A stretch of 64,000 nucleotides of DNA from positions 62,001-126,000 of the IMG/VR virus record IMGVR_UViG_3300025161_000004; one strand, given 5' to 3'. This document shows, one piece after another, positions 7,217 through 42,953 of this stretch. The notes below the pieces were generated by a model that was given only the letters and a program-made list of their open reading frames with translations, made no database searches and had not been told where the DNA came from. The position numbers and the translations under genes were made by a program. The first letter of the stretch is position 1, and the number at the start of each line of letters is the position of its first letter.

Positions 7217-8314
7217 TTAACTTTTACTATATGAAATTATTCTAACACTAGTATTACCCATATTATCAATTGCAACTATCTTTATTTTTTGATGTGCAAT
7301 ATCTATAGAAATAGGTTCATTATACTCCACAAACTTGCCGTTATCGTTTAATTGTACTAATATTTTTTTTACACCAGACTTATTATCAATGGCTTCAATA
7401 TTAAGAATTCTTTTACTATTTAATTCGTTAATACTTTCATCGATTTTTATTTCAGGTGCTTTTATATCTAAATAAAATTCGTATACATTTGTTTCTTCCT
7501 GATTATTTATCCAATCAAGTGCATAATATTCTATTTTATGTTTACCATCTTTAAGACCTAACATTGTTATTGGTTTTTCATACGGTTTAAATCCGCCACC
7601 ATCAATACTATAATAGATTACACTAACACCGACATTATCATCAACACTACTAATAACTAATAAATCTTTAGATGATAGTATTGAGTCGCTATTATTTATT
7701 TTTGATACTGGTGCAGTATTATCGATACCAAATAATAAATTGTTTTTATCAGAAAAATATGAAATTTCGCTAATATCTTCGACATTTCCAACATTATCTA
7801 CAGAATAAAATTTGAGATTAATATCTTTTTTAGTATCAAATGATATTAAACCATCATATTTAACAAATTCAGACCCATCTATAGAGTAATAAGTTACTTT
7901 AACTCCAGAAAGGGCATCATATGATGTGAGTTTAGCTTTAACATCATCACTATAATATGTTTTACCTTTAAAAGTGTATTTTTCTTTAGATATAAAACTA
8001 ACCTTTGTAACAGGTGCTCTACTATCAGCATAAACTGTCCATAGCTGCTCTCTTAATGGTTGTACATACCTACCTAATGAATCCATCTCCCATTTAGTCC
8101 TTATATAATTAGCACCCTCAGTATCAAGATACATTGGTTTACTAAATTTATAATCTTCTTCTCCTGTGCTAATATGAATATATAGAGGTAGTGACTTATT
8201 CCATATAATACTATCACCTTTTTGATATATGGTTTTTTTTTCGGGTAATTGTGATTGACTAAACAACGGTAAAGCTATTACCGAGAATACAAATATCACT
8301 ATATAACGTTTCAT
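7217..8314 (-). CDS. Secreted/envelope protein with Ig-like (OmpL47-type) beta-sandwich repeats
   Basis: N-terminal signal peptide; repeated 'D..AP.(T/S)...D..SGV...YYSIDG..F..Y......YS.D..GN.E' units. Confidence 0.65.
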   Translation of the reverse strand: MKRYIVIFVFSVIALPLFSQSQLPEKKTIYQKGDSIIWNKSLPLYIHISTGEEDYKFSKPMYLDTEGANYIRTKWEMDSLGRYVQPLREQLWTVYADSRAPVTKVSFISKEKYTFKGKTYYSDDVKAKLTSYDALSGVKVTYYSIDGSEFVKYDGLISFDTKKDINLKFYSVDNVGNVEDISEISYFSDKNNLLFGIDNTAPVSKINNSDSILSSKDLLVISSVDDNVGVSVIYYSIDGGGFKPYEKPITMLGLKDGKHKIEYYALDWINNQEETNVYEFYLDIKAPEIKIDESINELNSKRILNIEAIDNKSGVKKILVQLNDNGKFVEYNEPISIDIAHQKIKIVAIDNMGNTSVRIISYSKS

Positions 8315-8976
8315 TAATTTTTCTCATTTTTAAATCTATCTTTTATTTGTTGTAGTTCTCTTTGCATTCTTGGGCTTAATGGTACACCATTATTTCTAAA
8401 TATCGTTGTAGAATCAAGAATAGGTTTACTTACAATTACTTCTCTTTCAGGTGTGATAAATACACGTAATATATGGGTTCGATCCAATCGAATAACATAA
8501 TTACCGGGTTCTAATTCTTCAAAAGTTTTTGTTTCAATTATCGGTTTTTCTGGAATTTTTAATTCTTCCTTATTCTTTACTTCGTTATCTTTGGCAAATC
8601 TTTTTATTTTTTCAAGCTCAGATTTGATGATATTAATTTCAGCAAGCAATTTTTTCTTTATTTCATCATCTTCTTTTTTTTTATACTCGTATGCCATTCT
8701 CTCCATTTCATTAGCTCTTTCATTTAGTGAATCTAAGCGAGATAATAATTTAGTTTTTTGTTTAATAATTTTATTAAGTATAGTATGTACATTATCCGTA
8801 TTTTTGTCAAAAGATATATTTAATTCTTCAGCTAATCTGATTATAGAATCTTCTCTTGTCATCGGTATCGATGATAATTGAATTGGTTTTTCTTCTTTTG
8901 GATTATATCCAGTACATCCAAGTAATATTAAATTACTTACGAAGAAGTATTTCAAGTACTTTATCAACTCTTTCAT
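8314..8976 (-). CDS. Predicted lipoprotein with coiled coil
   Basis: Lipobox 'LILLGC' after a basic/hydrophobic N-terminus; long heptad region. Confidence 0.6.
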   Translation of the reverse strand: MKELIKYLKYFFVSNLILLGCTGYNPKEEKPIQLSSIPMTREDSIIRLAEELNISFDKNTDNVHTILNKIIKQKTKLLSRLDSLNERANEMERMAYEYKKKEDDEIKKKLLAEINIIKSELEKIKRFAKDNEVKNKEELKIPEKPIIETKTFEELEPGNYVIRLDRTHILRVFITPEREVIVSKPILDSTTIFRNNGVPLSPRMQRELQQIKDRFKNEKN

Positions 8977-9250
8977 TTGTTTTTTCTATTTTAGAAGATA
9001 ATTCACTATTAGTCTTCTGTATATCATCTAATTGTTTCATTATTAATGCATCGTTACCTCTTGATTTTAATTGTTCCTCAAGATGTTCTATCTTTTTATC
9101 ATGCTCCTTTACCTTATAATCAGTTATCATATAATTTCCAACACCCATAGCAACAAAAAGTACAAAACCAATTATGGTTTTATAATGACTCAACTTAGTT
9201 GCTAAAATACCTTCAAAAGTATTATTCCCATTTTTTTCTGAATTTGCCAT
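8933..9250 (-). CDS. Small single-pass membrane protein with C-terminal coiled coil
   Basis: Hydrophobic stretch 'IIGFVLFVAMGVG' then heptads; overlaps the downstream lipoprotein gene by 44 nt. Confidence 0.6.
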   Translation of the reverse strand: MANSEKNGNNTFEGILATKLSHYKTIIGFVLFVAMGVGNYMITDYKVKEHDKKIEHLEEQLKSRGNDALIMKQLDDIQKTNSELSSKIEKTNERVDKVLEILLRK

Positions 9251-9284
9251 TTTATGTATTTTTTTACATACATAAATACAGTTC

Positions 9285-12284
9285 TTATGTTGTATTGATA
9301 ATATTTAATAAATCATTTTTATTATTTTTTACTTTATCAGAATATACTGAAATTAACATACTTTTTAATGCATCACCTAACTTTTTACCTGACATACCCA
9401 TGTTTAAAAGATCATTACCTGTAATAACTAAATCTTTATAACTTTTTGGATATTTACCAGTTTTTAATTCTTCTGTTGCCATTAATAATTTCTTAGGGAG
9501 AATTTTGCTGTTAAGTGACGCAGGATATATTGTGTACATATTATGAGCGACAATCCTATTTTTAATTGGATTATTTGTTACATTATTAAATCCTGTCTGT
9601 AATGCAAGGATTTCCTTATATGTTGATATATCACCCTTTAAAATATTTTTATAAAACTCTGCTGGATTTTCTTGAACTGGTGATGCTAATAGATAAATAT
9701 ATTCACCCATAGTTTTAACTTCATTCCATGCATTCAAATCCCAATGATCTTCAAAACCTTCAGGAGATTTTGCACCAAATATTTGTTCATATAATCCAGT
9801 TTCTCTTAATAGATCAGCACCATACAACACATCACCCTTTTTTACTATCTTATCAAGTTCAGTTAATATTCTTTCTGCTGGTATTTCTTTTATCCTATGA
9901 GCATTTTGTTTTATTAATTCCATTGTTTTTTCTTCGATCATAAATCCTTCAAATCTTGCTGCGAATTGTACTGCTCTAAGCATACGAAGCGGATCATCTG
10001 AAAATGCCTTTGGATTAACCACTCTAATGATTTTATTTTTTAAATCTTCTTGTCCACCATATGGATCAACAATATCACCAGAAGCACTTTTAGCGATTGC
10101 ATTAATAGTAAAATCTCTTCTCTCTAAATCTTTTTCTATTGGCAATGAATGATCTGAGGCTATTTCAAATCCTTTATGTCCACCCTTACCAGTCGCTCTT
10201 TCTGTTCTTGGAATTGCGATATCGATCTCTTCTGATGAACCTTCTGGTTTAAATTTTAGTATACCAAATGATTTACCAACAGCATTAACTCTACCGTATT
10301 TCGATAATAATTTTTCTAAATTTTCTAATGATATACCAGTAATTAATACATCAAGGTCTTTAGAATCTTTACCTAAAAACTCATCTCTAACTGCACCACC
10401 AACAGAATATAACTTACCACCAAGATTTTCAATTTCTTGCTTAAATGGTAAATCATTTATGTCATTAATACTTATTGCTTCATTTATATTATTGCTATTT
10501 GGGGCAACATAATGATCATAATACATTTCTAGTTGTCTTTCATTATAAAAGTAGCGCACATTCTCAGGCTTATAGTTTACCATTTCACGACCTTTAATTA
10601 TTACTCCGTCATAACCAAGTTTCATCATTTTTTCTGAAATAGAATTAACATCTCTACTATCAGGATATGTCTTACCTTTTGCTTTAGATATTGGAAATAC
10701 TATGTTATTTTGAAACCAAATTTCCCAATCATTTAATGTATTAAATACTTTAGGATTTTTTGGTTTGGCGTTCACTAACATAACAAGTTTACCATATTTT
10801 CTTGCCATACTTTTATTTGATGCTGGCACACTATATAATCCTCTACCAAGTATTGCCATTCCATTATTCTCACCGTTAACTGCATTATCTGAGATACCTC
10901 TATATGTTACGTTCTCTCTTTTCCATTTCTTATATTCTAAATCACTATTTTCTCTTATAGGTCTCAATTTTAAATTTGAAATATCTCCTTGATTACATGC
11001 ATCACTTGTACCATCTGATTTACCTGCTAATTTACAATTTCTTTTAACTTCTACAGACGTACTATTTGGCATATATGTCATTTTTCTTTCGAATACAGGT
11101 TCTGAATCTTTCAGATACATTCGCATTTCTCTAATAACATATTCTTTAATTTTAGAGTAGTATGATTTATATACATTATCATCTAAACCATAATCAATTA
11201 ATATTACGGCAGGTTTTCCATTCCTTATTGATATACCATACGACGATCTAGCAACTAAATCACCTACAGGCATATCAGCATCATCCATTAATTGTTTTAT
11301 AACTTTAGCAAATGAATTTGGAGACTTACTATTTTGAAATGCTTCGTATTCTTCAGGTGTTACTGCTTGTTTCCATTCTTGATTGTATTTTTCACTAGTT
11401 AAAAATACACCAAAAGTTCTAAAACTATAACCTTCAATTTCTTTAAATTTTTCTTCACTAATTTTTGAAGCATATTCGGATATTATCCAAATAAAATCAG
11501 GATCAAAATCAAACACTTGAGCCACTGCATCTGCATAGTATTTATCAGTACCAATTTCGGCTTCTAAAAAATTTTGACCTAAACCCTTACTATTTTTTGC
11601 TAATTTTATAACCTTTTTATTATCAATTTTGAAAACAATTCTACTACTACCTTCACCCAATAATTTCAACTTATTTTTTAAATAAAAAATTTTACCCTTG
11701 TATGTTTTTATTTTTTTTAAATCTTCAACACTAAATGGTTTATCCGCTATTTTATTTTCATTTTCAACAACACCATCAGTTGACATATATAAAGATGAAC
11801 CATTTTCATTAATACCTAAACTATTCAAATAATTTTTTAACATCATTAACTTTTCATAAAACATTGGTTCGTTATTAGATAATGCAATAGCTTTTTTTAT
11901 ATTATGTTTGATAATAGAATAATGCTTATATAAAACATCTTTACTAAATTCAGCATAGTCTGATATAGATTCAATAAATGAAACACTTTTTTTTATCTGA
12001 CTAAGATTAACACCCTTTATTAAATTTTCTGTTACTTTTAAAGGTTCGATTGCCCATAAATCATGATCATCGGATGGTGGTTCTATATTTCGAAGCTGAT
12101 CTTCTTTATTCATATCACGTAATTCGTCTGTCGGTGCTACACTATTGTAGTAGTCTGATGAATCTAATAAATTCTCCAACGACAGTTCAGTAGCTTCATT
12201 AATATCATTATTTTTTTCTAATTCGATTTCTATACCTTTCAATAGGATTTCTTTAGGGGTTTGTTTTGTGCTTTTTTGTAACAT
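9285..12284 (-). CDS. Multidomain protein: kinase-like domain, ART-like domain and C-terminal class II CCA-adding (tRNA nucleotidyltransferase) domain
   Basis: Kinase-like 'LGEGSSRIVF..VIKLA..N..E...GDL...LIDYG'; ART-like 'YRG...GRGLYS...GYDGVII'; nucleotidyltransferase 'VGGAVRD....KDLDV', 'DLERRDFTINA', 'DDPLRMLRAVQFAARF', 'ERI'. Confidence 0.85.
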   Translation of the reverse strand: MLQKSTKQTPKEILLKGIEIELEKNNDINEATELSLENLLDSSDYYNSVAPTDELRDMNKEDQLRNIEPPSDDHDLWAIEPLKVTENLIKGVNLSQIKKSVSFIESISDYAEFSKDVLYKHYSIIKHNIKKAIALSNNEPMFYEKLMMLKNYLNSLGINENGSSLYMSTDGVVENENKIADKPFSVEDLKKIKTYKGKIFYLKNKLKLLGEGSSRIVFKIDNKKVIKLAKNSKGLGQNFLEAEIGTDKYYADAVAQVFDFDPDFIWIISEYASKISEEKFKEIEGYSFRTFGVFLTSEKYNQEWKQAVTPEEYEAFQNSKSPNSFAKVIKQLMDDADMPVGDLVARSSYGISIRNGKPAVILIDYGLDDNVYKSYYSKIKEYVIREMRMYLKDSEPVFERKMTYMPNSTSVEVKRNCKLAGKSDGTSDACNQGDISNLKLRPIRENSDLEYKKWKRENVTYRGISDNAVNGENNGMAILGRGLYSVPASNKSMARKYGKLVMLVNAKPKNPKVFNTLNDWEIWFQNNIVFPISKAKGKTYPDSRDVNSISEKMMKLGYDGVIIKGREMVNYKPENVRYFYNERQLEMYYDHYVAPNSNNINEAISINDINDLPFKQEIENLGGKLYSVGGAVRDEFLGKDSKDLDVLITGISLENLEKLLSKYGRVNAVGKSFGILKFKPEGSSEEIDIAIPRTERATGKGGHKGFEIASDHSLPIEKDLERRDFTINAIAKSASGDIVDPYGGQEDLKNKIIRVVNPKAFSDDPLRMLRAVQFAARFEGFMIEEKTMELIKQNAHRIKEIPAERILTELDKIVKKGDVLYGADLLRETGLYEQIFGAKSPEGFEDHWDLNAWNEVKTMGEYIYLLASPVQENPAEFYKNILKGDISTYKEILALQTGFNNVTNNPIKNRIVAHNMYTIYPASLNSKILPKKLLMATEELKTGKYPKSYKDLVITGNDLLNMGMSGKKLGDALKSMLISVYSDKVKNNKNDLLNIINTT

Positions 12285-35194: not shown

Positions 35195-36218
35195 TTATTC
35201 TAATAGATTAAAACCGATTTTTCCATTAAATTCTTTGTGTCCGTTATAATTGTTGTAATTATAGAGTTCTGCTAAAGTATGCTCTTTATTTACTCTTATA
35301 TCAGAACCAATTCTTTCAAGAACTTTATTACACATGTCAATCGATAATCTTCCAAAATTAACTTCAGCTAACAATCTTCCTTTTCTAAACAAAGCCGTAT
35401 CAATATTTTCTTTGACATTGATAGTTGCTAAAATCTTTATCTTAAAAAGATCACCCATAATACCATCACAAACGTTTAACAGTGTAGAGATTATATTATT
35501 TGATCGCATTTTTCTATCTATAAATAGATTTTCACTATCCTCAAATATAAGAATATTGTCTTTCAAATTTTGAATTACAAAACTCATATTTCTCGGCTCA
35601 AATAAATATTGAACCATGTCTTGTGTTACGTAAACAAAATCTTTTTTAACACTCTTCACTAAATGCTTTATAAGATAGGATTTTCCAGTACCTGGGTCAC
35701 CCATAAAAATAATTAATCCGCTTTTATCCATTGATAATATTTCTTGTAATTCATTAATGGTGAAGTTAATATTATAACTATCTTCATGTAATTCAAACTT
35801 AGGTAATGTAAATGGTATCTTGTTGATATTATAATTATCTGCAACAAGAAAATATACATTATCTTTTTTTTTCTAGACTTTTCTCGAAATCAATTAACAA
35901 AGCATTAATTTTTTCTGAATTTTTAAACTTACTACAGTAAAAATGTGATATTTTAAAAGTAATCAAAATATATGATTTATATGTTTTGTGAACTAAATGT
36001 ATCTCATTACTAAAATCTAATAAAATAGAATAACCTGCATTAAGTAATTTTTGTAATAAATCAGGGTTTATCAAGTTTTCATTATTATTTTTAAATATTT
36101 TATGGAATAATGTATTATTACTATCAATATTCATCACATCAAAAATATAACGGTAGTATAAAAAACTATTATATACCCCAATATATTTAGAATCTAATTG
36201 TTTATTTGTTCGAGTCAT
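35195..36218 (-). CDS. AAA+ ATPase apparently split by a frameshift at an A9 tract (joined product about 340 aa)
   Basis: Walker A 'GDPGTGKS', Walker B 'LIFED', 'LLNVCDG', 'ATIN', 'DTALFRKGR'. The ATPase frame is open for 44 codons upstream of 35731, back to the A9 tract at 35864-35872. Deleting one A fuses it to ORF 35859..36218. Confidence 0.7.
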
Positions 36219-37197
36219 AATGTTTGTTTATTATTTTAAAACTTCCTTTACTATATTGTACTACTACACCTTCAAACGGTTTACCATATAATTCTTTTAG
36301 GTCTTCAGAATATTTTTTTATTAAATCTGGCGTTAAAATCACGTTTTCTTCAACTAATTTCACCGTAGGTAAATCCATTTCCTTTGCAACATTAAGAAAA
36401 TAAAATTGATCGCCTTTACGTGCATATCTACGTTCATCAATCAAATAAACAGAAAACATTGCCCAACCATTACTCAATTTTGAGTGTGGATTAATCTTTA
36501 TTGATTGAATACCAATACCATATGATTCACCACGAATTGAAAGAGAGATTCTATACTTTTCACTAAACTCGGTAAGTTTCCTTTCAATATCATATCTTGA
36601 GACATTATTAGTATAGTTATTTGAAATTTCTAGCTTTAATTCATGTTTCCTACCCAAAACACCAAATGTTTTTTCGACGAAATGACGGTAAAATGAATTA
36701 CTTTGACCATCAATTTTTAAAAAAATATCAACCAATTCACCATATGGTAATTCTGAATTATCTAAATTTTCCCACCTTTCTTCATCAGTTACAGGAATAC
36801 CATATGGTAATTCTCCTTTTATTGAGATATCGGTTGGTGTGGGTGGTTCATAATGACTAATCCAAAGTAGTTCTGATACATCCTCACCAACATGGTAATC
36901 TTTAATTGTTTCGGAAATTTCCTTGGGTAATGCTGTGAATGGTATAATAATACCTTCACTCCAAATATCACGAAGTTTAACCGCCTTCACTCTTTTTTGA
37001 GAATATTTTTTATATTCTTGTGCCCACTCAGAATCTGGAAATACACTATCGGGTCGAACATAAATAACTTTATCACCAACCTTAAACTGATCTCTTTTTG
37101 TGATACATTTATACCCCAATACTGTACAAATATCTAAACGATCGGCGTTCGGATGATTGATAACTTCTTTTACTACTTCAATTGTTGCATCTCTCAT
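36202..37197 (-). CDS. ATP-dependent RNA ligase, DRB0094/Rnl5-like, with N-terminal OB (tRNA-binding-like) domain
   Basis: N-terminal 'HPNADRLD...V.G......F.VGD.V.Y..PDS'; motif I 'KIDG', III 'RGE.YG.GIQ', IV 'EGVV', V 'FKII'. Confidence 0.85.
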   Translation of the reverse strand: MRDATIEVVKEVINHPNADRLDICTVLGYKCITKRDQFKVGDKVIYVRPDSVFPDSEWAQEYKKYSQKRVKAVKLRDIWSEGIIIPFTALPKEISETIKDYHVGEDVSELLWISHYEPPTPTDISIKGELPYGIPVTDEERWENLDNSELPYGELVDIFLKIDGQSNSFYRHFVEKTFGVLGRKHELKLEISNNYTNNVSRYDIERKLTEFSEKYRISLSIRGESYGIGIQSIKINPHSKLSNGWAMFSVYLIDERRYARKGDQFYFLNVAKEMDLPTVKLVEENVILTPDLIKKYSEDLKELYGKPFEGVVVQYSKGSFKIINKHYDSNK

Positions 37198-37698: not shown

Positions 37699-38802
37699 TT
37701 AGATACTAAAATTACTTTGTTTGCGTGATTTAGCCCTTAACTCGGTAACCCTACGTAATGATTCTGGATTAAATCTTTCTCTTTTAACAATACTTACCAT
37801 GTGGTGATAATTCTCTTCAGAGATAACTTGACCAACATAACCAGTGTGTTTTAATATATAACTTTTTGGTAAAGAAGCAGTTGCATCACTTGGATTACCT
37901 GTAGTATCCAAAGTAGATTCAAATGTAAGATCAAGTAATTCTTTTACTTTATCTTCAACAGACTTGGTAATATTTTTCTTGGTTTTATTCAAAGCAGTTT
38001 CTATCTTGCTAAGAACATCACCTCTATTTACTTTAGAATATTCTTCAGTAAAATACTTCTTACCACTTTTCTTATTCAACTCACTGATAATAGCAAGTGA
38101 CCCATAGCAATCACGTATAAGTCTTTCCCATACTTGTTCAGCATAGGTAAATGAAGGAAACTTATCAATCGCAACTATTTCACCATCGATCAATACAATT
38201 GTACCAATCAAGTTCTTTGGTCTTTCAAAGTGTGCAATAAACTGTTCGAGTTTCTTGTCGTACTTATTAAAATACTTATCAAGATAATATCCAGTATTGG
38301 TATTGGTATCTCTACCTAATTTTTCAATAGCAGGATATATGTTTGCATGACCAACAGTATAACCTACTTTATCAAACAACATTTCTCTCATTGAGAGAGG
38401 TATCAAACGCATTTCGTTGCCGTTTGTATCTCTGATGTAACCTGTTTGTGAACCCTGTACACAACCAGCATCATCATATCTTACAGTAGATGATTTTGGC
38501 AAGTATGCTGACTTCACCATACCGTGATTTTGTGCTGATTGTTTAGTCATTATCGCCAATTGAGTTGGCATAATAACTTCCTTGTTTGATTCATTCTTAA
38601 ATATTAAGTTACCATAACCACTATTAGATGCTTTAACATCTTTAAATGGATTAGCAAATCTTTCATCCAAAGAAAATTCCTTGTCTGTAGTTAAACAAAC
38701 CAATTGCATATTCATTATTGATTGAACAACTATGTTTCCAGACGCATCCTTTACTGGTCTGCAACCTTTCAATAATTCGACAAATTCTTTCTGTGCATTC
38801 AT
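37699..38802 (-). CDS. ARPP/DUF6569-like protein
   Basis: 'YG.L.F.N......P......K..AQNH...', 'GCVQ.SQ.G' and 'G.IVLIDGEIVAID.FPS..Y...W..L' pattern, recognised from memory as ARPP-type; 11 nt downstream of the TROVE-like gene. Confidence 0.5.
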   Translation of the reverse strand: MNAQKEFVELLKGCRPVKDASGNIVVQSIMNMQLVCLTTDKEFSLDERFANPFKDVKASNSGYGNLIFKNESNKEVIMPTQLAIMTKQSAQNHGMVKSAYLPKSSTVRYDDAGCVQGSQTGYIRDTNGNEMRLIPLSMREMLFDKVGYTVGHANIYPAIEKLGRDTNTNTGYYLDKYFNKYDKKLEQFIAHFERPKNLIGTIVLIDGEIVAIDKFPSFTYAEQVWERLIRDCYGSLAIISELNKKSGKKYFTEEYSKVNRGDVLSKIETALNKTKKNITKSVEDKVKELLDLTFESTLDTTGNPSDATASLPKSYILKHTGYVGQVISEENYHHMVSIVKRERFNPESLRRVTELRAKSRKQSNFSI

Positions 38803-38813
38803 ATTCTTAATCT

Positions 38814-40451
38814 TTAGGCTTTGACATAATTTTTTCTTATTCTTGAAACATTGTTTGCTTCAATCAATTTTACTTGATTTAACAACCACTGTTTAGTATC
38901 AACTTCAAGCATCTTAGCACTCATTTGAGTAGCAATTGATGCTGGGTTGCTCACTGCAAGTAATGCAACATTCGTGTTTGCAATTGGTCTCACATTTGCA
39001 TTCATTTCAGCACCAACGATTGGTGAAATCTGGAATATAGGTAATGATCTCTGTGTTTCATTGATATATGTTTCAATTACTTCACCTGCCAAACCTTCAT
39101 ACTGATTTTCATAACCATCAGTGATTATAAAAATTGCATCATATTTATTTTGTTCACTTTCGTTTTTCAACAGAGAAACAAATGCTGTAGCAATATCAGT
39201 TGCCTCACCTTCAGTATTTACCACAACTTGAGTTTTAGATGATTTTTCCAAAACTTTTACAGTGAAATCAGCAATTGCTCTTGGAGTATTCTTTGATTCC
39301 ACTTTATTACCGAACATTGAGTTTGATCTATCAACAATAATTCCAATATTGTTGTACGCAAAACCAGTGATCTTATTAGATTCTGCAAGTTTATCAATTG
39401 CATTAATCAATTTAGCATCAAAACCATTTTCATAGCCAGTTTTATACAATGCCATGAAATCAGTCGCAGCTTCTAAATTAACTTCCTTAACTACACCAAG
39501 TTTTTCATTTTTCTTGGTCTGTCTTACTTGCTGATTTACAGAAGTAACTTCATTGTTTTTTCTAATCAATGCAAGTGTTGATTTTCTCAACAATTTAGTT
39601 GACCACATACCAGCATATTGTGGGTGTTTCTTATTTGAAACTAAACCAACCAATACTTCTTCAGGTACTTTAGTTACTGAAGTAATATCTTGTGTTGCAA
39701 CATAAAATTCGCTGATAATTGGAAATTCACTTTTTGAATAAAATGATTTATCACCCTTACCAAAGATGAATAAAAAAATCTTGTATAATTTTTCACTATT
39801 AAGAATTGGAGAATACTTTTTAAGAAAAGTATTACTGATTTTTACCTCCTTTTCATTTGAATAAACTCCACCACTTCTAATATACTTTTCAGCAATAGAA
39901 AGAAGAATAGATGTTTTCTTTTCACCATAGACGTGTTTTAAAATATTTCTAATCTTTTTTCTATATTTAACAGAATAAAACTCTAAATTGGGATTACCCA
40001 AAATGTAACCAAGTACTATTTTTCTTGCTCTTTCGTTATTAATTTTATTCTTGCGTAATAAAATAAACAAACGAAGCACATAAGAAATACCTAAATTTTT
40101 ATCTAGATTATACAATGCACCAAGAAGTGCTTTATCTGAAATACCATTATCAATCCAATCAATAGGATTAACAATATAACATGCACCACCATTAGCTGTA
40201 TTTTTAAATTCATTCAATATAGCTTCCTGAATAAATTTACCTGTAACACCATTTTGATTTGCAAGTATCAATGGTAATTCTTTTGATGTTGAATATAATG
40301 ATGATATAGCATTTTTTATTGCAACATCTTGCTCCTCTTTAGAATGATAATATGTAGCTCCACCTCTCGCACCACTTGCAATAGAAATACCATCAATTAA
40401 TGATTTTTTTATTACTGATAATTGTTTTGCGGTTAATACTAATTGTTCCAT
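38814..40451 (-). CDS. TROVE/Ro60-like protein with C-terminal vWA (MIDAS) domain
   Basis: About 360-aa basic helical N-terminal region starting 'GGATYY'; then MIDAS 'IIVDRSNSM', 'ATDIA', 'IITDGYEN'. About 545 aa, as for Ro60. Likely ATG is at 40451. The vWA call is firm; the TROVE call is inferred. Confidence 0.6.
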   Translation of the reverse strand: MEQLVLTAKQLSVIKKSLIDGISIASGARGGATYYHSKEEQDVAIKNAISSLYSTSKELPLILANQNGVTGKFIQEAILNEFKNTANGGACYIVNPIDWIDNGISDKALLGALYNLDKNLGISYVLRLFILLRKNKINNERARKIVLGYILGNPNLEFYSVKYRKKIRNILKHVYGEKKTSILLSIAEKYIRSGGVYSNEKEVKISNTFLKKYSPILNSEKLYKIFLFIFGKGDKSFYSKSEFPIISEFYVATQDITSVTKVPEEVLVGLVSNKKHPQYAGMWSTKLLRKSTLALIRKNNEVTSVNQQVRQTKKNEKLGVVKEVNLEAATDFMALYKTGYENGFDAKLINAIDKLAESNKITGFAYNNIGIIVDRSNSMFGNKVESKNTPRAIADFTVKVLEKSSKTQVVVNTEGEATDIATAFVSLLKNESEQNKYDAIFIITDGYENQYEGLAGEVIETYINETQRSLPIFQISPIVGAEMNANVRPIANTNVALLAVSNPASIATQMSAKMLEVDTKQWLLNQVKLIEANNVSRIRKNYVKA

Positions 40452-40515
40452 AAACAAATTTTATATTTAAAAACTAATCTATGTCTTTATTTTCCGTATT
40501 TTCTTATTGATACCT

Positions 40516-40553: not shown

Positions 40554-40584
40554 AAAAAAAAGTGATGAATTTTTTACTCATCAC
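40554..40584 (-). terminator. Intrinsic terminator closing the ncRNA cluster
   Basis: GTGATGAG-TAAAAAA-TTCATCAC-TTTTTTTT. Confidence 0.75.
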
Positions 40585-40660
40585 CTCTTCAAAAATCTTG
40601 AATAATTTTATTAGGTTATATTTTGACTTACTTATACAGTAAGTATCTAAATTTCTTATT

Positions 40661-40751
40661 TAAAGGAATATTTCTTTTGTATTTTTTTGGTCGTAAAAGT
40701 GAAATTTTACAATTTAACTATTTTACTGAAAATACAAATAGTTTTCCTTTA
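40661..40751 (-). ncRNA. Structured small RNA unit A (Y-RNA-like, about 91 nt)
   Basis: Ends pair (TAAAGGAA/TTCCTTTA); internal loop; second helix TTTGTATTTT/AAAATACAAA; contains GGAAAACT-N11-CAGTAA; inner hairpin GTAAAA/TTTTAC. Confidence 0.6.
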
Positions 40752-40868
40752 ATGTCTTCAAATTAAAACCACCTATTTTAATTTTTTAATAGGAATATAC
40801 AAGTTCGATTTTTTTAATTGGTTATAACTTAAAATTTGAATCAAAAATCGTAACTTCATTATATATAG

Positions 40869-40941
40869 TAGCGAGAGCAGGATTCGAACCTGCGATCTTG
40901 TGGTTATGAGCCACACTAGTTAACCGCTTCTCTATCTCGCA
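40869..40941 (-). tRNA. tRNA-Met (CAT), initiator-like, no encoded CCA
   Basis: Cloverleaf: acceptor TGCGAGA/TCTCGCT with 1:72 mismatch, anticodon arm TGTGG-CTCATAA-CCACA, T arm GCAGG-TTCGAAT-CCTGC; 3' end ACTA; weak D stem. Confidence 0.85.
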
Positions 40942-40945
40942 ATAT

Positions 40946-41072
40946 GATTTAGGGAAAAATTTGTCAGTTATTTTTTTTGACAGATAAACACTAACACTAC
41001 TTATTAGTAAATTATCACTCTATAATAATTTAATTAAATTACTGTAATAACTTCAAGTTTTCCCATTAAATC
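40946..41072 (-). ncRNA. Structured small RNA unit B (Y-RNA-like, about 113-127 nt)
   Basis: Ends pair (GATTTA/TAAATC, GGGAAAA/TTTTCCC); upper helix AGTTATT/AATAACT; contains GGAAAACT-N11-CAGTAA. Confidence 0.6.
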
Positions 41073-41104
41073 TTTAAATAACAACCATCTGCTGTTATTT
41101 TATG

Positions 41105-41240
41105 TGGGGGAGGCAGGATTCGAACCTGCTATACTTACTATTGGATTAGTAATATGACCCAATTACTGTAAATATAATCAGTTCTCCAAAAAAGGAGTAG
41201 TTTAAATTATATTTGAAAGTATTCGTTTTACTACTCCCCC
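41105..41240 (-). ncRNA. 136-nt tRNA-like RNA (unit C) whose anticodon arm is replaced by the permuted repeat motif
   Basis: Acceptor GGGGGAG/CTCCCCC-A; D-like arm AGTA/TACT; perfect T arm GCAGG-TTCGAAT-CCTGC; central arm AAATATAAT..CTCC-T6-GGAG-AACTG-ATTATATTT then ACAGTAA; extra hairpin TTACTA/TAGTAA. Confidence 0.75.
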
Positions 41241-41250
41241 ATTTGTTTCA

Positions 41251-41281
41251 CAAAAATAAACTGTAAAATTTATCTTGTCAA
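41251..41281 (-). promoter_or_regulatory. Bacteroidota-type promoter of the ncRNA cluster
   Basis: TTG at 41281-41279, 20-nt spacer, -7 TATTTTTG at 41258-41251, about 10 nt upstream of the tRNA-like 5' end. Confidence 0.65.
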
Positions 41282-41366: not shown

Positions 41367-42953
41367 TTAATCAGAATTTAGTTTTTTTATACTTTCATCC
41401 CTTAATTTCTGTAATTTTTCTTGGAATTTATCATCTAGACTATCAAGATTTATTTCATCTTGTAATTCAAGGGCTTTGGTGACATTTTTTAATACATCAT
41501 CTTTATCCTCATTATCTACCTTATTATTTTTACTATCAAGTTTCTTCATTTTCTCATTAAGATACTCTGGTTCATTCTTCTTAAATTCATCAGCACTACT
41601 CTTTGTTTTAAGCATATTACCAGTACCTTCGATTTCAAGTGTGTTATTATTAAAAATGCAATCTTTAAATATATAACCATCTTTAGCAAAACGTGCTTTC
41701 AATATCTGAAGGTTTGCTAAATTGTGGAATTTCTGTTCTTGTGTTCTGGCTATGGACATTAAGAAATGTGATTTTTGTGCTCTTTTAATATTTCCACTCA
41801 TATGATTTATATAAACTAACTCACTTTCAATACCAGAGCGATTAGTTTGAATTGCTGTCCAGCATGGAACATTAAACTCTGCTGCCATTGATTCGAATGC
41901 TTTGATAACCGCTAATTCATCTGCATTAGTATCACCACCCCTTTTATGTGAATCAACACAATCAATATAATCAAGAATTATAATATCGAACTTATAGCCA
42001 TATTTTTTTTGAAATCTAATTATATAATCCTTAATCATTGGTAAGGTAGTATTTTCTTGGGAGAATCTTTTTATAATTAGTTTATTATTGTATTCTTTTT
42101 GAATCTCCTCATGTTTTTTATTTACTGCTTTAGCTACTTCTTCAGTCCTATCATCAATCTCAGATAATGGAATTTTAGACCATATAGCATAATGCTTTCT
42201 TCTGATTTGGTCTGGCGTATCTTCAAATATGATCTGAAGAACATTTTTACCACTATCAAATGCATGATTTGCGAATTTAGTTAAAATTGTTGTTTTACCT
42301 GCACCAGTTGGTGCTAAGATAACACCTATCTCGCCACGACCAAGACCTCCGCCTGTAGCTTCATCGAGTATAACTATTCCAGTTGGAATAGGTTCTCTAA
42401 ATTCCTTACGTAATGATGATTCAATATCAGTAAACACTTCAATTGCATCATCATCTTCAACACCTATATCAGAAATTTTTCTGATTCTTTCTTCTATTTC
42501 ATAAACATTCTTATCAAGTTTATTCCGTACCAACTTTTCAATAATTTCATTGGCAAGTTTCTTGTATTCCTGTTGCTTAATAAAATGCCATGTTTGTTTT
42601 TGAACAGTATCGCCATCAAACATTAAAACTCCATTAATACATGCTTCTTGCCAGTATATTATTGGCTTTAATACACCAGTTAATTGTTCATAGTCAATTT
42701 CATTATCTAATTGAAATTCTTTTATTGCATGATTAATACTTTTATTTTGAAGATTAGGTACTTTCTTGTATTTGTCATAATATTCTTTAATAACAATAAA
42801 AAATCTTTTGTAATTATGATCATCAAAATAACCAACTTCAAGATATGGTAATATTTTTTCGCAAAAACTACTTTCAGTGACTAACTGCCATAGTAGTTTG
42901 AGTTGAAAATCCGTACCTAAATATGTTGCAATACTATCTTTGTTTTCAGACAT
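41367..42953 (-). CDS. DnaB-like replicative helicase (T4 gp41-like)
   Basis: 'IPTG...LD..TGGGL.RGE...ILAPTGAGKT', 'ILDYID', 'WTAIQTNR', 'LKARF'. Confidence 0.9.
   Translation of the reverse strand: MSENKDSIATYLGTDFQLKLLWQLVTESSFCEKILPYLEVGYFDDHNYKRFFIVIKEYYDKYKKVPNLQNKSINHAIKEFQLDNEIDYEQLTGVLKPIIYWQEACINGVLMFDGDTVQKQTWHFIKQQEYKKLANEIIEKLVRNKLDKNVYEIEERIRKISDIGVEDDDAIEVFTDIESSLRKEFREPIPTGIVILDEATGGGLGRGEIGVILAPTGAGKTTILTKFANHAFDSGKNVLQIIFEDTPDQIRRKHYAIWSKIPLSEIDDRTEEVAKAVNKKHEEIQKEYNNKLIIKRFSQENTTLPMIKDYIIRFQKKYGYKFDIIILDYIDCVDSHKRGGDTNADELAVIKAFESMAAEFNVPCWTAIQTNRSGIESELVYINHMSGNIKRAQKSHFLMSIARTQEQKFHNLANLQILKARFAKDGYIFKDCIFNNNTLEIEGTGNMLKTKSSADEFKKNEPEYLNEKMKKLDSKNNKVDNEDKDDVLKNVTKALELQDEINLDSLDDKFQEKLQKLRDESIKKLNSD

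What the first reader, a model, noticed from the sequence alone, without database searches (positions are those of the whole stretch)
41105..41240. tRNA-shaped RNA whose anticodon arm is swapped for a circularly permuted copy of the motif
This RNA has a perfect 7-bp acceptor stem (GGGGGAG/CTCCCCC plus discriminator A), a short D-like arm and a canonical T arm, but it is 136 nt and has no anticodon loop. In the anticodon position is the repeat helix with its strands in reverse order: partner strand first, capped by a U6 loop where units A and B have free ends. This is the topological inverse of YrlA, where the Ro-binding stem forms the termini and the acceptor-like stem is looped. It could be processed by RNase P and receive CCA (the 3' end is ACA; a CCA-adding domain is encoded at 9285..12284). 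That would make it a tRNA mimic tethered to the Ro-like protein (inference). Its 17-nt T arm (41113-41129) is identical to that of the neighbouring tRNA-Met (40877-40893), hinting at local duplication or conversion.
Basis: partly seen in the sequence, partly recalled or inferred. Interest (0 to 1): 0.88.

Follow-up and report, generated by a model that had tools for sequence, protein, structure and literature searches.

The report
Phage tRNA carrying a Ro-type handle
A huge uncultivated phage encodes a 136-base tRNA-shaped RNA with a conserved extra hairpin, belonging to a family found beside a Ro60-like protein gene, so it is probably a hybrid of a tRNA and a Y RNA, though no binding to that protein has been tested.

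Summary
Window 41240→41105 (− strand) is a 136-nt RNA with a perfect 7-bp acceptor stem and a canonical T arm. It scores 34 bits on Rfam tRNA (threshold 29), and ARAGORN does not call it.

It is neither chance nor a lone pseudogene. At least 75 distinct homologues (131-145 nt) in huge-phage contigs keep both tRNA ends and the central insert. None occurs in 185,579 cellular genomes. Nineteen base pairs covary.

One point needs correcting. In the family the ~65-nt insert sits in the D loop, closed by a covarying D stem. Nearly all of the 52 aligned homologues keep an anticodon arm, UGA in 27. The window copy is about 4 nt shorter there and has no 7-nt anticodon loop.

The insert is a closed copy of a stem-loop-stem "handle" with invariant AGAAC…UUUNCAGUA. 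Open copies flank ordinary tRNAs here, and in relatives they flank permuted, YrlA-like tRNAs.

The array always lies just upstream, on the same strand, of a 545-aa protein whose model matches only Ro60 structures and carries a MIDAS motif.

Best reading: a tRNA-Y RNA chimera that partners the phage Ro60 homologue. Ro binding, end processing and CCA addition are inferred, not shown. A second covarying helix that competes with the acceptor stem is unexplained.

The parts
41253..41281 (-). Sigma-70-like promoter (TTGACA, 17 nt, TATTTT), ending 12 nt upstream of the RNA's 5' end
   Evidence: The −35 box and its spacing are conserved in L002, L003 and L027 (alignment A1).
41105..41240 (-). The 136-nt tRNA-shaped RNA with a handle insert (nt 1 = 41240, nt 136 = 41105)
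   Evidence: Rfam tRNA 34 bits. Fold z −4.3. 52 to 75 distinct homologues with covariation.
41234..41240 (-). 5' acceptor strand GGGGGAG (nts 1-7)
   Evidence: Pairs with 41106-41112. Six of the seven pairs show double-sided changes across the family. The homologues were selected for 7 of 7 pairing, so the 100% pairing is partly built in.
41228..41231 (-). D-stem 5' strand GUAA (nts 10-13)
   Evidence: Pairs with UUAC at 41149-41152. Family D-stem types are GC/GC, UGC/GCA, GAU/AUC, GUG/CAC and GCA/UGC.
41205..41214 (-). Handle helix P2, partner strand (nts 27-36)
   Evidence: Pairs with 41170-41179. RNAalifold predicts this helix on its own. It is 95% paired in the family, with U·G wobbles that are valid only on this RNA strand.
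41194..41201 (-). ACUACUCC (nts 40-47), complementary to nts 4-11. This is the competing 'decoy' helix and overlaps the 5' strand of P1.
   Evidence: Its complementarity follows acceptor changes in relatives.
41184..41197 (-). Handle tip P1: CUCC-UUUUUU-GGAG hairpin (nts 44-57)
   Evidence: Base-pair probability about 1.0. 99% paired in the family, with two covarying pairs.
41163..41185 (-). Conserved handle motif AGAACU-N5-U-N2-UU-N-CAGUAA (nts 56-78), including the 3' strand of P2
   Evidence: three copies in the window, none expected. A56 G57 A58 A59 C60 and C73 A74 G75 U76 A77 are invariant in 52 sequences.
41149..41162 (-). Remainder of the D loop, with GGG at the G18/G19 position, plus the D-stem 3' strand UUAC (nts 79-92)
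   Evidence: GG is nearly invariant in the family.
41130..41148 (-). Degenerate anticodon and variable region (nts 93-111). It can form only a 6- or 8-nt loop hairpin, and that hairpin borrows the D-stem strand.
   Evidence: The window is about 4 nt shorter here than L002. The window row does not form three of the four family anticodon-stem pairs counted.
41113..41129 (-). T arm GCAGG-UUCGAAU-CCUGC (nts 112-128)
   Evidence: 100% paired in the family, with three covarying pairs. Identical to 40877-40893.
41104..41112 (-). 3' acceptor strand CUCCCCC, discriminator A (41105), then C (41104)
   Evidence: The base after the discriminator is C in 52 of 52 homologues.
41078..41098 (-). Conserved hairpin AUAACAGC-AGAUG-GUUGUUAU between the RNA and unit 2
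   Evidence: Nearly invariant in L002, L003 and L027.
40945..41070 (-). Unit 2: an open handle (motif strand 41039-41061, partner strand roughly 40950-40973). Relatives hold a tRNA inside it; here the content is unrecognisable.
40868..40941 (-). tRNA-Met (CAU), the only intact tRNA in the array
40661..40752 (-). Unit 3: an open handle (motif strand 40723-40745) around an acceptor minihelix that ends in ACCA
   Evidence: Relatives carry a tRNA with anticodon CGA here.
40556..40590 (-). Intrinsic terminator closing the roughly 690-nt non-coding transcription unit
38814..40457 (-). Ro60-like protein gene (TROVE-type helical ring plus vWA domain with MIDAS motif), 545 aa from the ATG
37699..38802 (-). 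ARPP-1 domain protein, always next to the Ro60-like gene
36202..37197 (-). RNA ligase (PHA02142 OB fold plus RNA_ligase domain)
9285..12284 (-). 999-aa protein with a C-terminal CCA-adding (tRNA nucleotidyltransferase) domain

Best explanation
The 136-nt RNA is one member of a conserved family of phage RNAs that fuse a tRNA body to a Y-RNA-like 'handle'.

Shown:
- It has a tRNA acceptor stem, T arm and D stem.
- A roughly 65-nt stem, internal loop, stem hairpin is inserted in the 5' part of the D loop.
- The same handle, with open ends, flanks ordinary tRNAs in the window. In relatives it also flanks permuted tRNAs that have the YrlA strand order.
- The whole array sits directly upstream, on the same strand, of a divergent Ro60 homologue.

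Inferred:
- The RNA is transcribed from its own promoter as the first module of a roughly 690-nt non-coding transcript.
- RNase P trims the 5' end, and the 3' end is trimmed to the conserved C and completed to CCA. The phage encodes a CCA-adding domain.
- The RNA folds into an L-shaped tRNA core with the handle protruding.
- The handle, with its invariant AGAAC in the internal loop and UUUNCAGUA at its base, is the binding site for the Ro60-like ring.
- The RNA would then tether a tRNA-shaped module to Ro60, as Y RNAs tether effectors. The likely setting is the contest between phage and host over tRNA cleavage and repair.

In most relatives the module displays a real anticodon arm. The window copy has lost a canonical one, and resembles YrlA in that respect.
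For: - Rfam tRNA hit above threshold.
- 61 matching stretches in viral contigs, 61 in metagenome contigs and none in cellular genomes. These give 75 distinct sequences.
- RNAalifold predicts the acceptor stem, P2, P1, the anticodon stem and the T arm without guidance. 19 of its 30 pairs show compensatory change.
- Pair counting: 96.7% of cells paired, covariation score 0.376 against 0.162 in shuffles, exceeded by 0 of 500 shuffles. Sliding the partners drops pairing to about 50%.
- Five D-stem pair types close the insert.
- The motif occurs three times in the window with none expected.
- Ro60 fold of the neighbour: ESM Atlas TROVE clusters at score 0.94 and TM 0.56/0.66, invariant DxSxS and TD, and Foldseek's top 13 PDB hits all Ro60, Rsr or phage Ro60 at E 1e-6 to 7e-4.
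- Every handle-bearing locus with more than about 2 kb of flank beyond the motifs has the order helicase, array, Ro60-like gene, and ARPP-1 follows wherever the locus extends past the Ro60-like gene.
- Helicase loci without handles also lack the Ro60-like gene, and this joint absence sits at three or more separate places on the helicase tree.
- Published Y RNA criteria fit. They lie within 4 kb of Ro60 on the same strand, contain a tRNA-like domain, and have a stem with a GAA-containing bulge (PMC4201824, PMC12135203).
Against: - There are no RNA data, so ends, CCA, abundance and Ro binding are all untested.
- Pfam TROVE and sequence-profile searches of the PDB miss the protein. Foldseek TM-scores are modest at 0.28-0.45.
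- The handle motif AGAACU is not the published YrlA motif GNCGAAN0-1G.
- Rfam YrlA scores only 14.9 bits in a relative and nothing in the window.
- The array and the Ro gene are adjacent, so a single insertion or deletion could move both. Their co-occurrence therefore does not prove interaction.
- The window copy lacks an anticodon loop and its two neighbouring cargo tRNAs have decayed, so this particular copy may be losing function.
- A covarying helix that competes with the acceptor stem does not fit a simple static tRNA fold.
Confidence: 0.55

Rival explanations
1. It is a working decoder tRNA with an extra arm. Family members would be genuine translating tRNAs, mostly with anticodon UGA. 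The D-loop hairpin would be a tolerated or required extra arm, for example a surrogate for the long variable arm of Ser, Tyr and Leu tRNAs. The window copy would be a broken member.
For: - All nucleotides of the tRNA core are present in the consensus: U8, A14, A15 with U48, G18 G19, U54 U55 C56 and A58.
- The anticodon arm has a covarying stem and a 7-nt loop in nearly all of the 52 aligned sequences. Anticodons are UGA in 27, CGA in 1, GUA in 7 and UAA in 1. These belong to amino acids whose bacterial tRNAs have long variable arms, which is my own knowledge.
- C follows the discriminator in 52 of 52.
Against: - The window copy has no 7-nt anticodon loop.
- In the GUA group position 33 is C, G or A, never U.
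- A 65-nt helix close to the tRNA elbow is likely to clash on the ribosome. This is inference.
- The same handle also occurs with no tRNA inside it and around permuted tRNAs. That points to a function of the handle itself.
Confidence: 0.15
2. It is a tRNA gene with an intron. The handle would be cut out of the D loop by an endonuclease and the halves joined, perhaps by the phage RNA ligase at 36202-37197, to give a tRNA of about 72 nt.
For: - Removing the insert from the consensus would leave a normal-length cloverleaf.
- An insert-less version exists as DNA in one relative, L027:6066-6137.
- An RNA ligase gene lies nearby.
- The permuted units would also need cutting and joining to become one-piece tRNAs.
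Against: - No group I or II intron or known ribozyme was found in the window region at E up to 10.
- I saw no bulge-helix-bulge motif.
- Handles without cargo, and handles lying outside tRNAs, are not introns.
- The insert-less L027 copy looks like a deletion between two AAACAC repeats that also removed the GG of the D loop.
- No joined form appears in the available runs, although none of them is shown to be RNA.
- In the window copy, excision would still not give an anticodon loop.
Confidence: 0.08
3. The window copy is a decaying relic. The family is functional, but this phage is losing its tRNA cargo and the 136-nt gene here no longer does anything.
For: - About 4 nt are missing and the sequence has diverged exactly in the anticodon and variable region.
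- The position-15/48 tertiary pair of the consensus (A15 with U48) is not kept.
- The cargo of units 2 and 3 has decayed.
- The thermodynamic ensemble is split, with P2 at probability 0.47 and the T arm at 0.65.
Against: - Compared with L002, both the T stem (G-C against A-U) and the D stem (A-U against G-C) differ by fully compensatory changes.
- The acceptor stem, P1 and the handle motif are intact, and the promoter is conserved.
- YrlA-type mimics work without an anticodon loop (PMC4201824).
Confidence: 0.15
4. It is a domain of one large structured RNA. The whole roughly 690-nt array would act as a single ornate RNA, related in role to GOLLD. The tRNA-like module would never be released.
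For: - GOLLD (RF02032) occupies the same slot in relatives and lies 15 nt upstream of a close homologue of this element in L087 and L078.
- The literature notes tRNAs linked to GOLLD (10.1101/2024.12.08.627333).
- The spacers fold well, with z −5.0 and −3.4.
Against: - There is no GOLLD or ROOL hit in the window, even at E up to 10.
- The modules have tRNA-type ends, with CCA or C encoded at their 3' ends. That argues for processing into separate RNAs.
Confidence: 0.12
5. It is a DNA-level repeat. The handle would be an inverted-repeat DNA element, such as a recombination or mobility site for tRNA cassettes, that happened to insert into a tRNA gene.
For: - The core UUUACAGUAAA is nearly palindromic.
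- The cargo between handle strands differs between close relatives.
Against: - Many handle pairs are G·U wobbles, which pair only in RNA of this strand. An example is columns 35 and 77, U·G in 38 of 52 sequences.
- All copies lie on the transcribed strand.
- The helices that enclose the insert are kept by compensatory changes.
Confidence: 0.04

Closest known systems
YrlA, the bacterial and phage Y RNA with a tRNA-like domain (Rfam RF02553; Chen et al. 2014, PMC4201824)
   Same: It is encoded next to a Ro60 homologue on the same strand. It combines a stem that has a conserved purine-rich motif on its 5' strand with tRNA-like T, D and acceptor elements. The window copy also lacks a true anticodon loop.
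   Different: The topology is inverted. Here the tRNA ends are free and the stem is closed by a loop. The stem is inserted in the D loop rather than taking the place of the anticodon stem. Most family members keep a real anticodon arm. The motif is AGAACU, not GNCGAAN0-1G. The Rfam YrlA model does not match.
[quoted passage not shown]
   Same: The processed form has open, CCA-ended acceptor termini and is held together by the Ro-binding stem. The 136-nt RNA would be a one-chain equivalent of that. The permuted units in relatives encode N-CCA at the start of the acceptor loop.
   Different: That RNA consists of two pieces after cleavage. Processing of the phage RNAs has not been tested.
Thermus phage phiLo Ro60 with Yrl1 and Yrl2 (PMC12135203; PDB 9L5Y, 9KOP)
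   Same: A phage Ro60 homologue with Y-like RNAs encoded upstream of its gene, each a stem, bulge, stem with a GAA-type motif. The phage protein is among the structural matches to the window's protein.
   Different: The protein is only 12-14% identical. In my keyword reading of the paper, the phiLo RNAs were not described as tRNA-shaped.
GOLLD RNA and its linked tRNAs (RF02032; 10.1101/2024.12.08.627333)
   Same: It belongs to the same kind of genomic neighbourhood, a phage tRNA island. In relatives GOLLD lies 15 nt upstream of a homologue of this RNA.
   Different: There is no GOLLD in the window. The handle motif is not part of the Rfam GOLLD match.
Phage T4 species 1 RNA (rnaC, 139 nt)
   Same: A stable RNA of about 140 nt in a phage tRNA cluster, with a T arm and an acceptor-like stem and no assigned function in the T4 record.
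   Different: It gives only a weak tRNA-Sec hit (17.5 bits, E 0.7). It has no handle motif and no Ro60 gene nearby. The resemblance is one of kind only.
Intron-containing, split and permuted tRNA genes of archaea and algae (from my own knowledge and PMC4090602)
   Same: They have insertions at non-canonical positions such as the D loop. Permuted gene order, with the 3' half before the 5' half, is seen in the relatives' units.
   Different: Those depend on a bulge-helix-bulge motif and a splicing endonuclease. Neither is evident here, and no spliced form has been seen.

Membership tests
tRNA (Rfam RF00005) | Score at or above the curated threshold | tested here: met
   34.0 bits against 29, but only with a 79-nt insertion.
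tRNA (Rfam RF00005) | 7-bp acceptor stem with discriminator, and a T arm with a UUCRANY loop | tested here: met
.
tRNA (Rfam RF00005) | 5-bp anticodon stem with a 7-nt loop | tested here: not met
   The window copy can form only a 6- or 8-nt loop, and only by borrowing the D-stem strand. Nearly all of the 52 aligned homologues meet this feature.
tRNA (Rfam RF00005) | Compact D arm with G18 G19, and a length of about 70-95 nt | tested here: not met
   The RNA is 136 nt. The D stem encloses an insert of about 65 nt. GG is present. ARAGORN makes no call.
tRNA (Rfam RF00005) | Aminoacylation and use in translation | not testable with these tools
Y RNA / YrlA | Encoded within about 4 kb of a Ro60 (TROVE) gene on the same strand | tested here: met
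   The RNA ends 648 nt upstream of the Ro60-like gene on the same strand. The synteny holds in every handle-bearing locus with more than about 2 kb of flank beyond the motifs.
Y RNA / YrlA | Conserved 5'-strand motif GNCGAAN0-1G (CGAA) in a bulged stem | tested here: not met
   The handle has an invariant AGAAC(U) at the junction of stem and internal loop. It is similar but not the same motif.
Y RNA / YrlA | Strand order stem, T arm, closed acceptor stem-loop, D arm, stem | tested here: not met
   This RNA has the inverse order. Eighteen distinct units in relatives have the YrlA order.
Y RNA / YrlA | Match to the Rfam YrlA model | tested here: not met
   No hit in the window at E up to 10. 14.9 bits against a threshold of 69 in L037.
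Y RNA / YrlA | Bound by the Ro60 protein | not testable with these tools
   Needs immunoprecipitation or a gel-shift assay.
Ro60 / TROVE protein (for the 545-aa neighbour) | Helical-repeat ring followed by a vWA domain with a MIDAS motif | tested here: met
   The AF2 model (pLDDT 76) has helices over residues 8-358 and an alpha/beta domain over 368-532. D374, S376, S378, T444 and D445 are invariant. The top 13 Foldseek hits are all Ro60.
Ro60 / TROVE protein (for the 545-aa neighbour) | Match to Pfam TROVE (PF05731), or sequence similarity to solved Ro60 structures | tested here: not met
   No Pfam, PHROG or PDB-sequence hit. The similarity shows only at the level of fold and language-model features.
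Self-splicing intron or known ribozyme in a tRNA | Match to group I or II intron or small-ribozyme models, or a spliced form in reads | tested here: not met
   No such Rfam hit in the region at E up to 10. No joints in the runs laid on it, although none is a proven RNA run.
GOLLD RNA (RF02032) | Match to the Rfam model | tested here: not met
   None in the window. Present beside homologues in L087 and L078, and in L009.

The most novel reading that the evidence does not exclude
Huge phages carry a modular system in which genuine tRNA bodies are wired to a Ro60 ring through one shared RNA handle. The bodies would be one-piece with the handle in the D loop, or permuted and split with the handle at the variable-loop position, or ordinary tRNAs flanked by it. 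The competing 'decoy' helix lies inside the presumed Ro-binding loop, so Ro binding would switch the RNA between a closed state and the tRNA fold. The system would display, protect or repair anticodon arms during host attack on tRNAs, and in some phages it would be physically coupled to GOLLD. That would be the first functional link between Ro60/Y RNA biology, GOLLD, and permuted or split tRNAs in a bacterial virus.
Probability: 0.2. Interest if true: 0.92.

Novelty: new variant of a known kind. Interest (0 to 1): 0.78.

Why it matters
- **Y RNA function.** How Y RNAs use their tRNA-like parts is still open. This family offers natural variants in which the same presumed Ro-binding stem is attached to a tRNA at three different positions. 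One form has free, tRNA-type ends and usually a real anticodon arm. That makes direct tests possible: does Ro60 ride on a chargeable tRNA, and does the tRNA part recruit tRNA enzymes?
- **Ro60 detection.** The work uncovers a large clade of Ro60 homologues that domain searches miss.
- **GOLLD.** In some phages GOLLD sits in the same transcription neighbourhood as Ro60 and Y-like RNAs. That gives a concrete lead for GOLLD's unknown function.
- **Annotation.** At least 75 sequences are missed or half-called by tRNA finders. The permuted units are not recognisable as tRNAs at all.

Tried and rejected
- **GenBank phages.** Megablast found nothing. Sensitive blastn matched only the tRNA-Met part. 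tblastn with the 545-aa protein found one distant uncultured phage.
- **First pattern scan.** AAGATTTAATGGGAAAACT returned three chance matches inside coding sequence in unrelated contigs.
- **Sequence searches on the 545-aa protein.** Pfam, PHROGs, phmmer and profile searches against PDB sequences were all empty. Only the language-model and structure searches showed the Ro60 relationship. I found no TROVE or vWA domain in the 20 window ORFs scanned against Pfam.
- **Hammerhead idea.** CUGAUGA occurs in some copies of the handle but is not conserved. No ribozyme or intron model matches.
- **RNA evidence.** No run is shown to be RNA. Laying four runs gave no joints. One 255-nt contig (X7, 40947-41201) has ends I cannot interpret.
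- **Competing helix in fixed alignment columns.** Not significant, because the partner sits in different columns in different lineages. A per-sequence search was needed.
It is not conserved, so I replaced it with the long-range D stem.
- **Gene conversion of the T arm.** The identity is confirmed, but the same T stem is also seen in other family members, so nothing can be concluded.
- **The ~1-kb insertion splitting the element in L023.** No informative ORF or domain.
- **DNA-level repeat.** Rejected because of the strand-specific G·U pairs.
Full report
**1. What is at the coordinates**

The window is part of a 246.8-kb viral contig (IMGVR_UViG_3300025161_000004). It has 28% G+C, and every ORF of 100 aa or more outside a larger one lies on the − strand. 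The gene set is typical of a phage: a DnaB-like helicase, a 5'-3' exonuclease, a RecA-like protein, an RNA ligase, and a 999-aa protein with a CCA-adding domain.

The finding lies on the − strand, 41240→41105, in a 910-nt gap without ORFs. That gap separates the helicase gene (41367-42953) from a 545-aa ORF (38814-40457).

- Rfam's tRNA model matches the full 136 nt at 34.0 bits (threshold 29). It handles 79 nt as an insertion. ARAGORN calls only the neighbouring tRNA-Met.
- The acceptor stem is perfect (GGGGGAG/CUCCCCC, discriminator A). The T arm is canonical.
- The sequence folds much better than shuffles, −39.6 kcal/mol with z −4.3.
- A sigma-70-like promoter (TTGACA, 17 nt, TATTTT) ends 12 nt upstream. 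An intrinsic terminator follows at 40590-40556.
- The RNA therefore opens a non-coding unit of about 690 nt that also holds tRNA-Met (40941-40868).

These include the U6-capped CCUC/GGAG hairpin, the missing CCA, the CCA-adding domain, and the 17-nt identity of the two T arms.

**2. The repeat motif**

The pattern ARAACT-N5-T-NN-TT-N-CAGTAA occurs three times in the window. All three are on the − strand, between 40723 and 41185. No matches occurred in any of 100 shuffles.

- In units 2 and 3 this strand lies 5' and a partner strand lies 3'. Together they form a stem, internal loop, stem that encloses a cargo.
- In the 136-nt RNA the partner strand (nts 27-36) comes first. Then comes a short hairpin with the U6 loop, then the motif strand (nts 56-78).

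I call this structure the handle. It has a distal stem P1, an internal loop containing AGAAC, a proximal stem P2, and a tail NCAGUAA.

**3. Relatives**

Loci fetched with the helicase and with the 545-aa protein show that the element is conserved with its insert in the closest relatives, L002 and L003. One relative, L027, has the same gene without the insert. That copy looks like a deletion between two AAACAC repeats.

A pattern joining the motif to a T loop gave the following:

- 61 stretches in IMG/VR
- 61 stretches in metagenome contigs
- none in one genome from each of 185,579 bacterial and archaeal species

From these I extracted 75 distinct elements of 131-145 nt with a 7/7 acceptor stem.

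RNAalifold, run on 52 of them without any guidance, predicts the acceptor stem, P2, P1, an anticodon stem and the T arm. Of its 30 pairs, 19 show compensatory changes.

Counting pairs for my own structure gave these results:

- 96.7% of cells are paired.
- 18 pairs show double-sided changes.
- The covariation score is 0.376 against 0.162 in shuffles, exceeded by 0 of 500 shuffles.
- Pairing drops to about 50% when the partners are slid by one to three columns.

The 100% pairing of the acceptor stem is partly a result of my selection rule. The other helices were not selected that way.

Many handle pairs are G·U wobbles. These are valid only in RNA of this strand, so the handle is not a DNA-level repeat.

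**4. Where the insert sits**

In the family consensus the order is as follows:

1. Acceptor 5' strand, then U8 A9.
2. A 2-4-nt D-stem strand.
3. An A-rich linker, the handle, and NCAGUAA.
4. A-GG-UAAA, then the other D-stem strand.
5. One nucleotide, then a 5-bp anticodon stem with a 7-nt loop.
6. A 5-nt variable loop, the T arm, and the acceptor 3' strand.

The D stem that closes the insert covaries: GC/GC, UGC/GCA, GAU/AUC, GUG/CAC, GCA/UGC, and GUAA/UUAC in the window. The nucleotides that build the tRNA core are all in place: U8, A14, A15 with U48, G18 G19, U54 U55 C56 and A58.

The handle is therefore an insertion in the 5' part of the D loop. It does not replace the anticodon arm.

Anticodon loops are UGA in 27 of 52, GUA in 7, and a scatter of others.

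The window copy is the exception. It is about 4 nt shorter and diverged between the D-stem strand and the variable loop. It can form either the D stem or a hairpin with a 6- or 8-nt loop, but not both. Its ensemble is split, with the acceptor stem and P1 at probability about 1.0, the T arm at 0.65 and P2 at 0.47.

Against its closest relative, the T stem and the D stem differ by fully compensatory changes. These helices were therefore under selection at least until recently.

**5. The other unit types**

The same handle recurs three to six times per locus in related phages. It occurs in four settings:

- around ordinary tRNAs
- around nothing
- inside the D loop, which is the 136-nt class
- around permuted tRNAs

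The permuted units have the order motif strand, T arm, 3' acceptor strand, N-CCA, loop, 5' acceptor strand, D arm, anticodon arm, partner strand. I found 18 distinct examples, and their acceptor strands covary. That is the strand order published for YrlA (PMC4201824). [quoted passage not shown]

In the 136-nt class the base after the discriminator is C in 52 of 52, and CCA is complete in 6. This argues for a tRNA-type 3' end.

In the window itself the cargo of unit 2 is unrecognisable. The cargo of unit 3 is reduced to an acceptor minihelix ending in ACCA.

**6. The neighbouring protein**

The 545-aa ORF gave no Pfam, PHROG or PDB-sequence match. The top 120 of its 371 homologues come from metagenomic contigs of up to about 350 kb, and the only names any source gives them are 'hypothetical protein'.

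- The ESM Atlas places it next to TROVE/Ro60 clusters, at feature score 0.94 and TM 0.56/0.66 over 380 residues.
- An alignment of 26 homologues has an invariant DxSxS and a T-D pair, which is a MIDAS motif.
- An AlphaFold model (pLDDT 76) shows a helical repeat region followed by an alpha/beta domain.
- Foldseek against the PDB returns Ro60, Rsr and the Thermus phage Ro60 as all 13 matches with E ≤ 0.001. Probability is 1.00 and the alignments span the full length. TM-scores are only 0.28-0.45.

I accept it as a divergent Ro60 homologue.

The order helicase, RNA array, Ro60-like gene holds in every handle-bearing locus with more than about 2 kb of flank beyond the motifs, and ARPP-1 follows wherever the locus extends past the Ro60-like gene. 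Helicase loci without handles also lack the Ro60-like gene. On a helicase tree these loci fall in at least three separate places. Because the array and the gene are adjacent, this shows a shared module. It does not show a physical interaction.

**7. How it most likely works**

The steps that are shown are these:

- a conserved tRNA-derived RNA with a structured D-loop insert
- the insert is the same motif that scaffolds the neighbouring units
- a Ro60-like gene lies directly downstream

The steps that are inferred are these:

- processing by RNase P
- trimming to C74 and completion of CCA
- an L-shaped fold with the handle protruding
- binding of the handle by the Ro60-like ring
- a role as a tether or decoy in the contest over tRNA cleavage and repair

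The last point follows published proposals for Ro60 with a tRNA-like partner in jumbo phages (PMC7824862) and for Y RNAs in general (PMC4201824, PMC12135203). I put 0.55 on this reading.

The rivals, each with its refuting result, are listed in their own section. They are a decoding tRNA with an extra arm, an intron, a decaying copy, a domain of one large RNA, and a DNA-level repeat.

**8. An unexplained feature**

Nucleotides 4-10 of the 5' end are complementary to a 7-mer inside the insert. This complementarity follows changes in the acceptor stem:

- GAGAUAG/CUAUCUC, in 37 of 45 sequences with that 5' end
- GAAGUAG/CUACUUC
- GGAGUAG/CUACUCC, the window type (partner at 41201-41194)
- GAGUUAG/CUAACUC
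- GGAAUAG/CUAUUCC

The helix excludes the acceptor stem. Minimum-energy folding prefers the acceptor stem in 46 of 52 sequences. Forcing the alternative in the window copy costs about 6 kcal/mol.

It may be a folding intermediate or a switch. The decoy strand lies in the loop that I propose as the protein site. I could not test this.

**9. Comparison with what is known, and novelty**

- The RNA passes the Rfam tRNA threshold but fails the anticodon-arm, D-arm compactness and length features.
- It meets the genomic criterion for a Y RNA but fails the YrlA motif, strand order and Rfam model.
- It therefore works like a Y RNA/tRNA mimic without being a member of YrlA.
- GOLLD (RF02032) lies 15 nt upstream of a close homologue in L087 and L078, and fills the same slot in L009.
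- None of the ten papers listed by a search for GOLLD with Ro60, TROVE or Y RNA contains the word GOLLD.
- T4 species 1 RNA is a loose precedent of kind only.

I rate it a new variant of a known kind. It is a tRNA-Y RNA chimera with inverted topology, in a family of at least 75 sequences that tRNA finders miss or only half-call.

Noticed in passing
window 38814-40457 (− strand): A 545-aa protein with no Pfam, PHROG or PDB-sequence hit is a divergent Ro60 (TROVE plus vWA/MIDAS) homologue by fold. A search returned 371 homologues; the listed ones come from metagenomic contigs of up to about 350 kb, and the only names given are 'hypothetical protein'.
   Followed up: yes
L087:10715-11283 and L078:4246-4820; also L009:7278-7695: GOLLD RNA (RF02032) lies 15 nt upstream of a close homologue of the 136-nt RNA, between the helicase and the Ro60-like gene. 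In L009 GOLLD fills the slot without handles or a Ro60-like gene. None of the ten papers listed by the library search contains GOLLD together with Ro60 or Y RNA.
   Followed up: partly
L004:7276-7425, L037:4523-4660, L019:6058-6210 and 15 further distinct units: Permuted tRNA units with the order handle strand, T arm, 3' acceptor strand, N-CCA, loop, 5' acceptor strand, D arm, anticodon arm, handle strand. The acceptor strands covary. This is the YrlA strand order, but with a full anticodon arm.
   Followed up: partly
window 41194-41201 against 41230-41237 (− strand nts 40-47 and 4-11); homologues in alignment A3: A second helix that excludes the acceptor stem and covaries with it across the family, in at least five Watson-Crick variants. 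Its function is unknown.
   Followed up: partly
window 40688-40727 (− strand), inside unit 3 (40661-40752): The cargo is reduced to an acceptor-stem minihelix (AGUAAAA…UUUUACG) followed by ACCA. Relatives carry a 77-nt tRNA with anticodon CGA at this place.
   Followed up: no
window 40945-41070 (− strand), unit 2; L002:6924-6999 against L027:6196-6271: The cargo tRNA of relatives is unrecognisable in the window. Between two close relatives the same tRNA body carries different anticodon arms, CAA and GUA.
   Followed up: no
L002:6924-6999 and 7251-7327; L027:6522-6599: Handle-flanked tRNAs with Ser, Leu or Tyr anticodons have 5-nt variable loops. They also have an A1·A72 mismatch and an encoded CCA. 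They therefore lack the long variable arm that bacterial tRNAs for these amino acids normally have.
   Followed up: no
L023 about 8447-9440; the same split in L057 and L072: A member of the 136-nt class is split by an insertion of about 1 kb inside the decoy strand. The ORFs within it have no informative domain.
   Followed up: partly
L009:7801-7888, L012:7003-7092, L018:7114-7202, L022:7060-7143, L029:4522-4611: tRNA-Met genes of 84-90 nt in related phages, unusually long for tRNA-Met.
   Followed up: no
window 41078-41098 (− strand): An 8-bp hairpin (AUAACAGC-AGAUG-GUUGUUAU) directly after the 136-nt RNA is almost invariant among the close relatives.
   Followed up: no
window 40947-41201: Run X7, of unknown kind, holds a 255-nt contig at depth 45 that covers nt 40 of the RNA through unit 2, with two differences from the window. 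The reason for its ends is unclear.
   Followed up: no
window 9285-12284 (− strand): The CCA-adding domain occupies only residues of about 620-995 of a 999-aa protein. Residues 203-385 match a PHROG of unknown function (phrog_4301); the rest of the N-terminal part has no family match.
   Followed up: no
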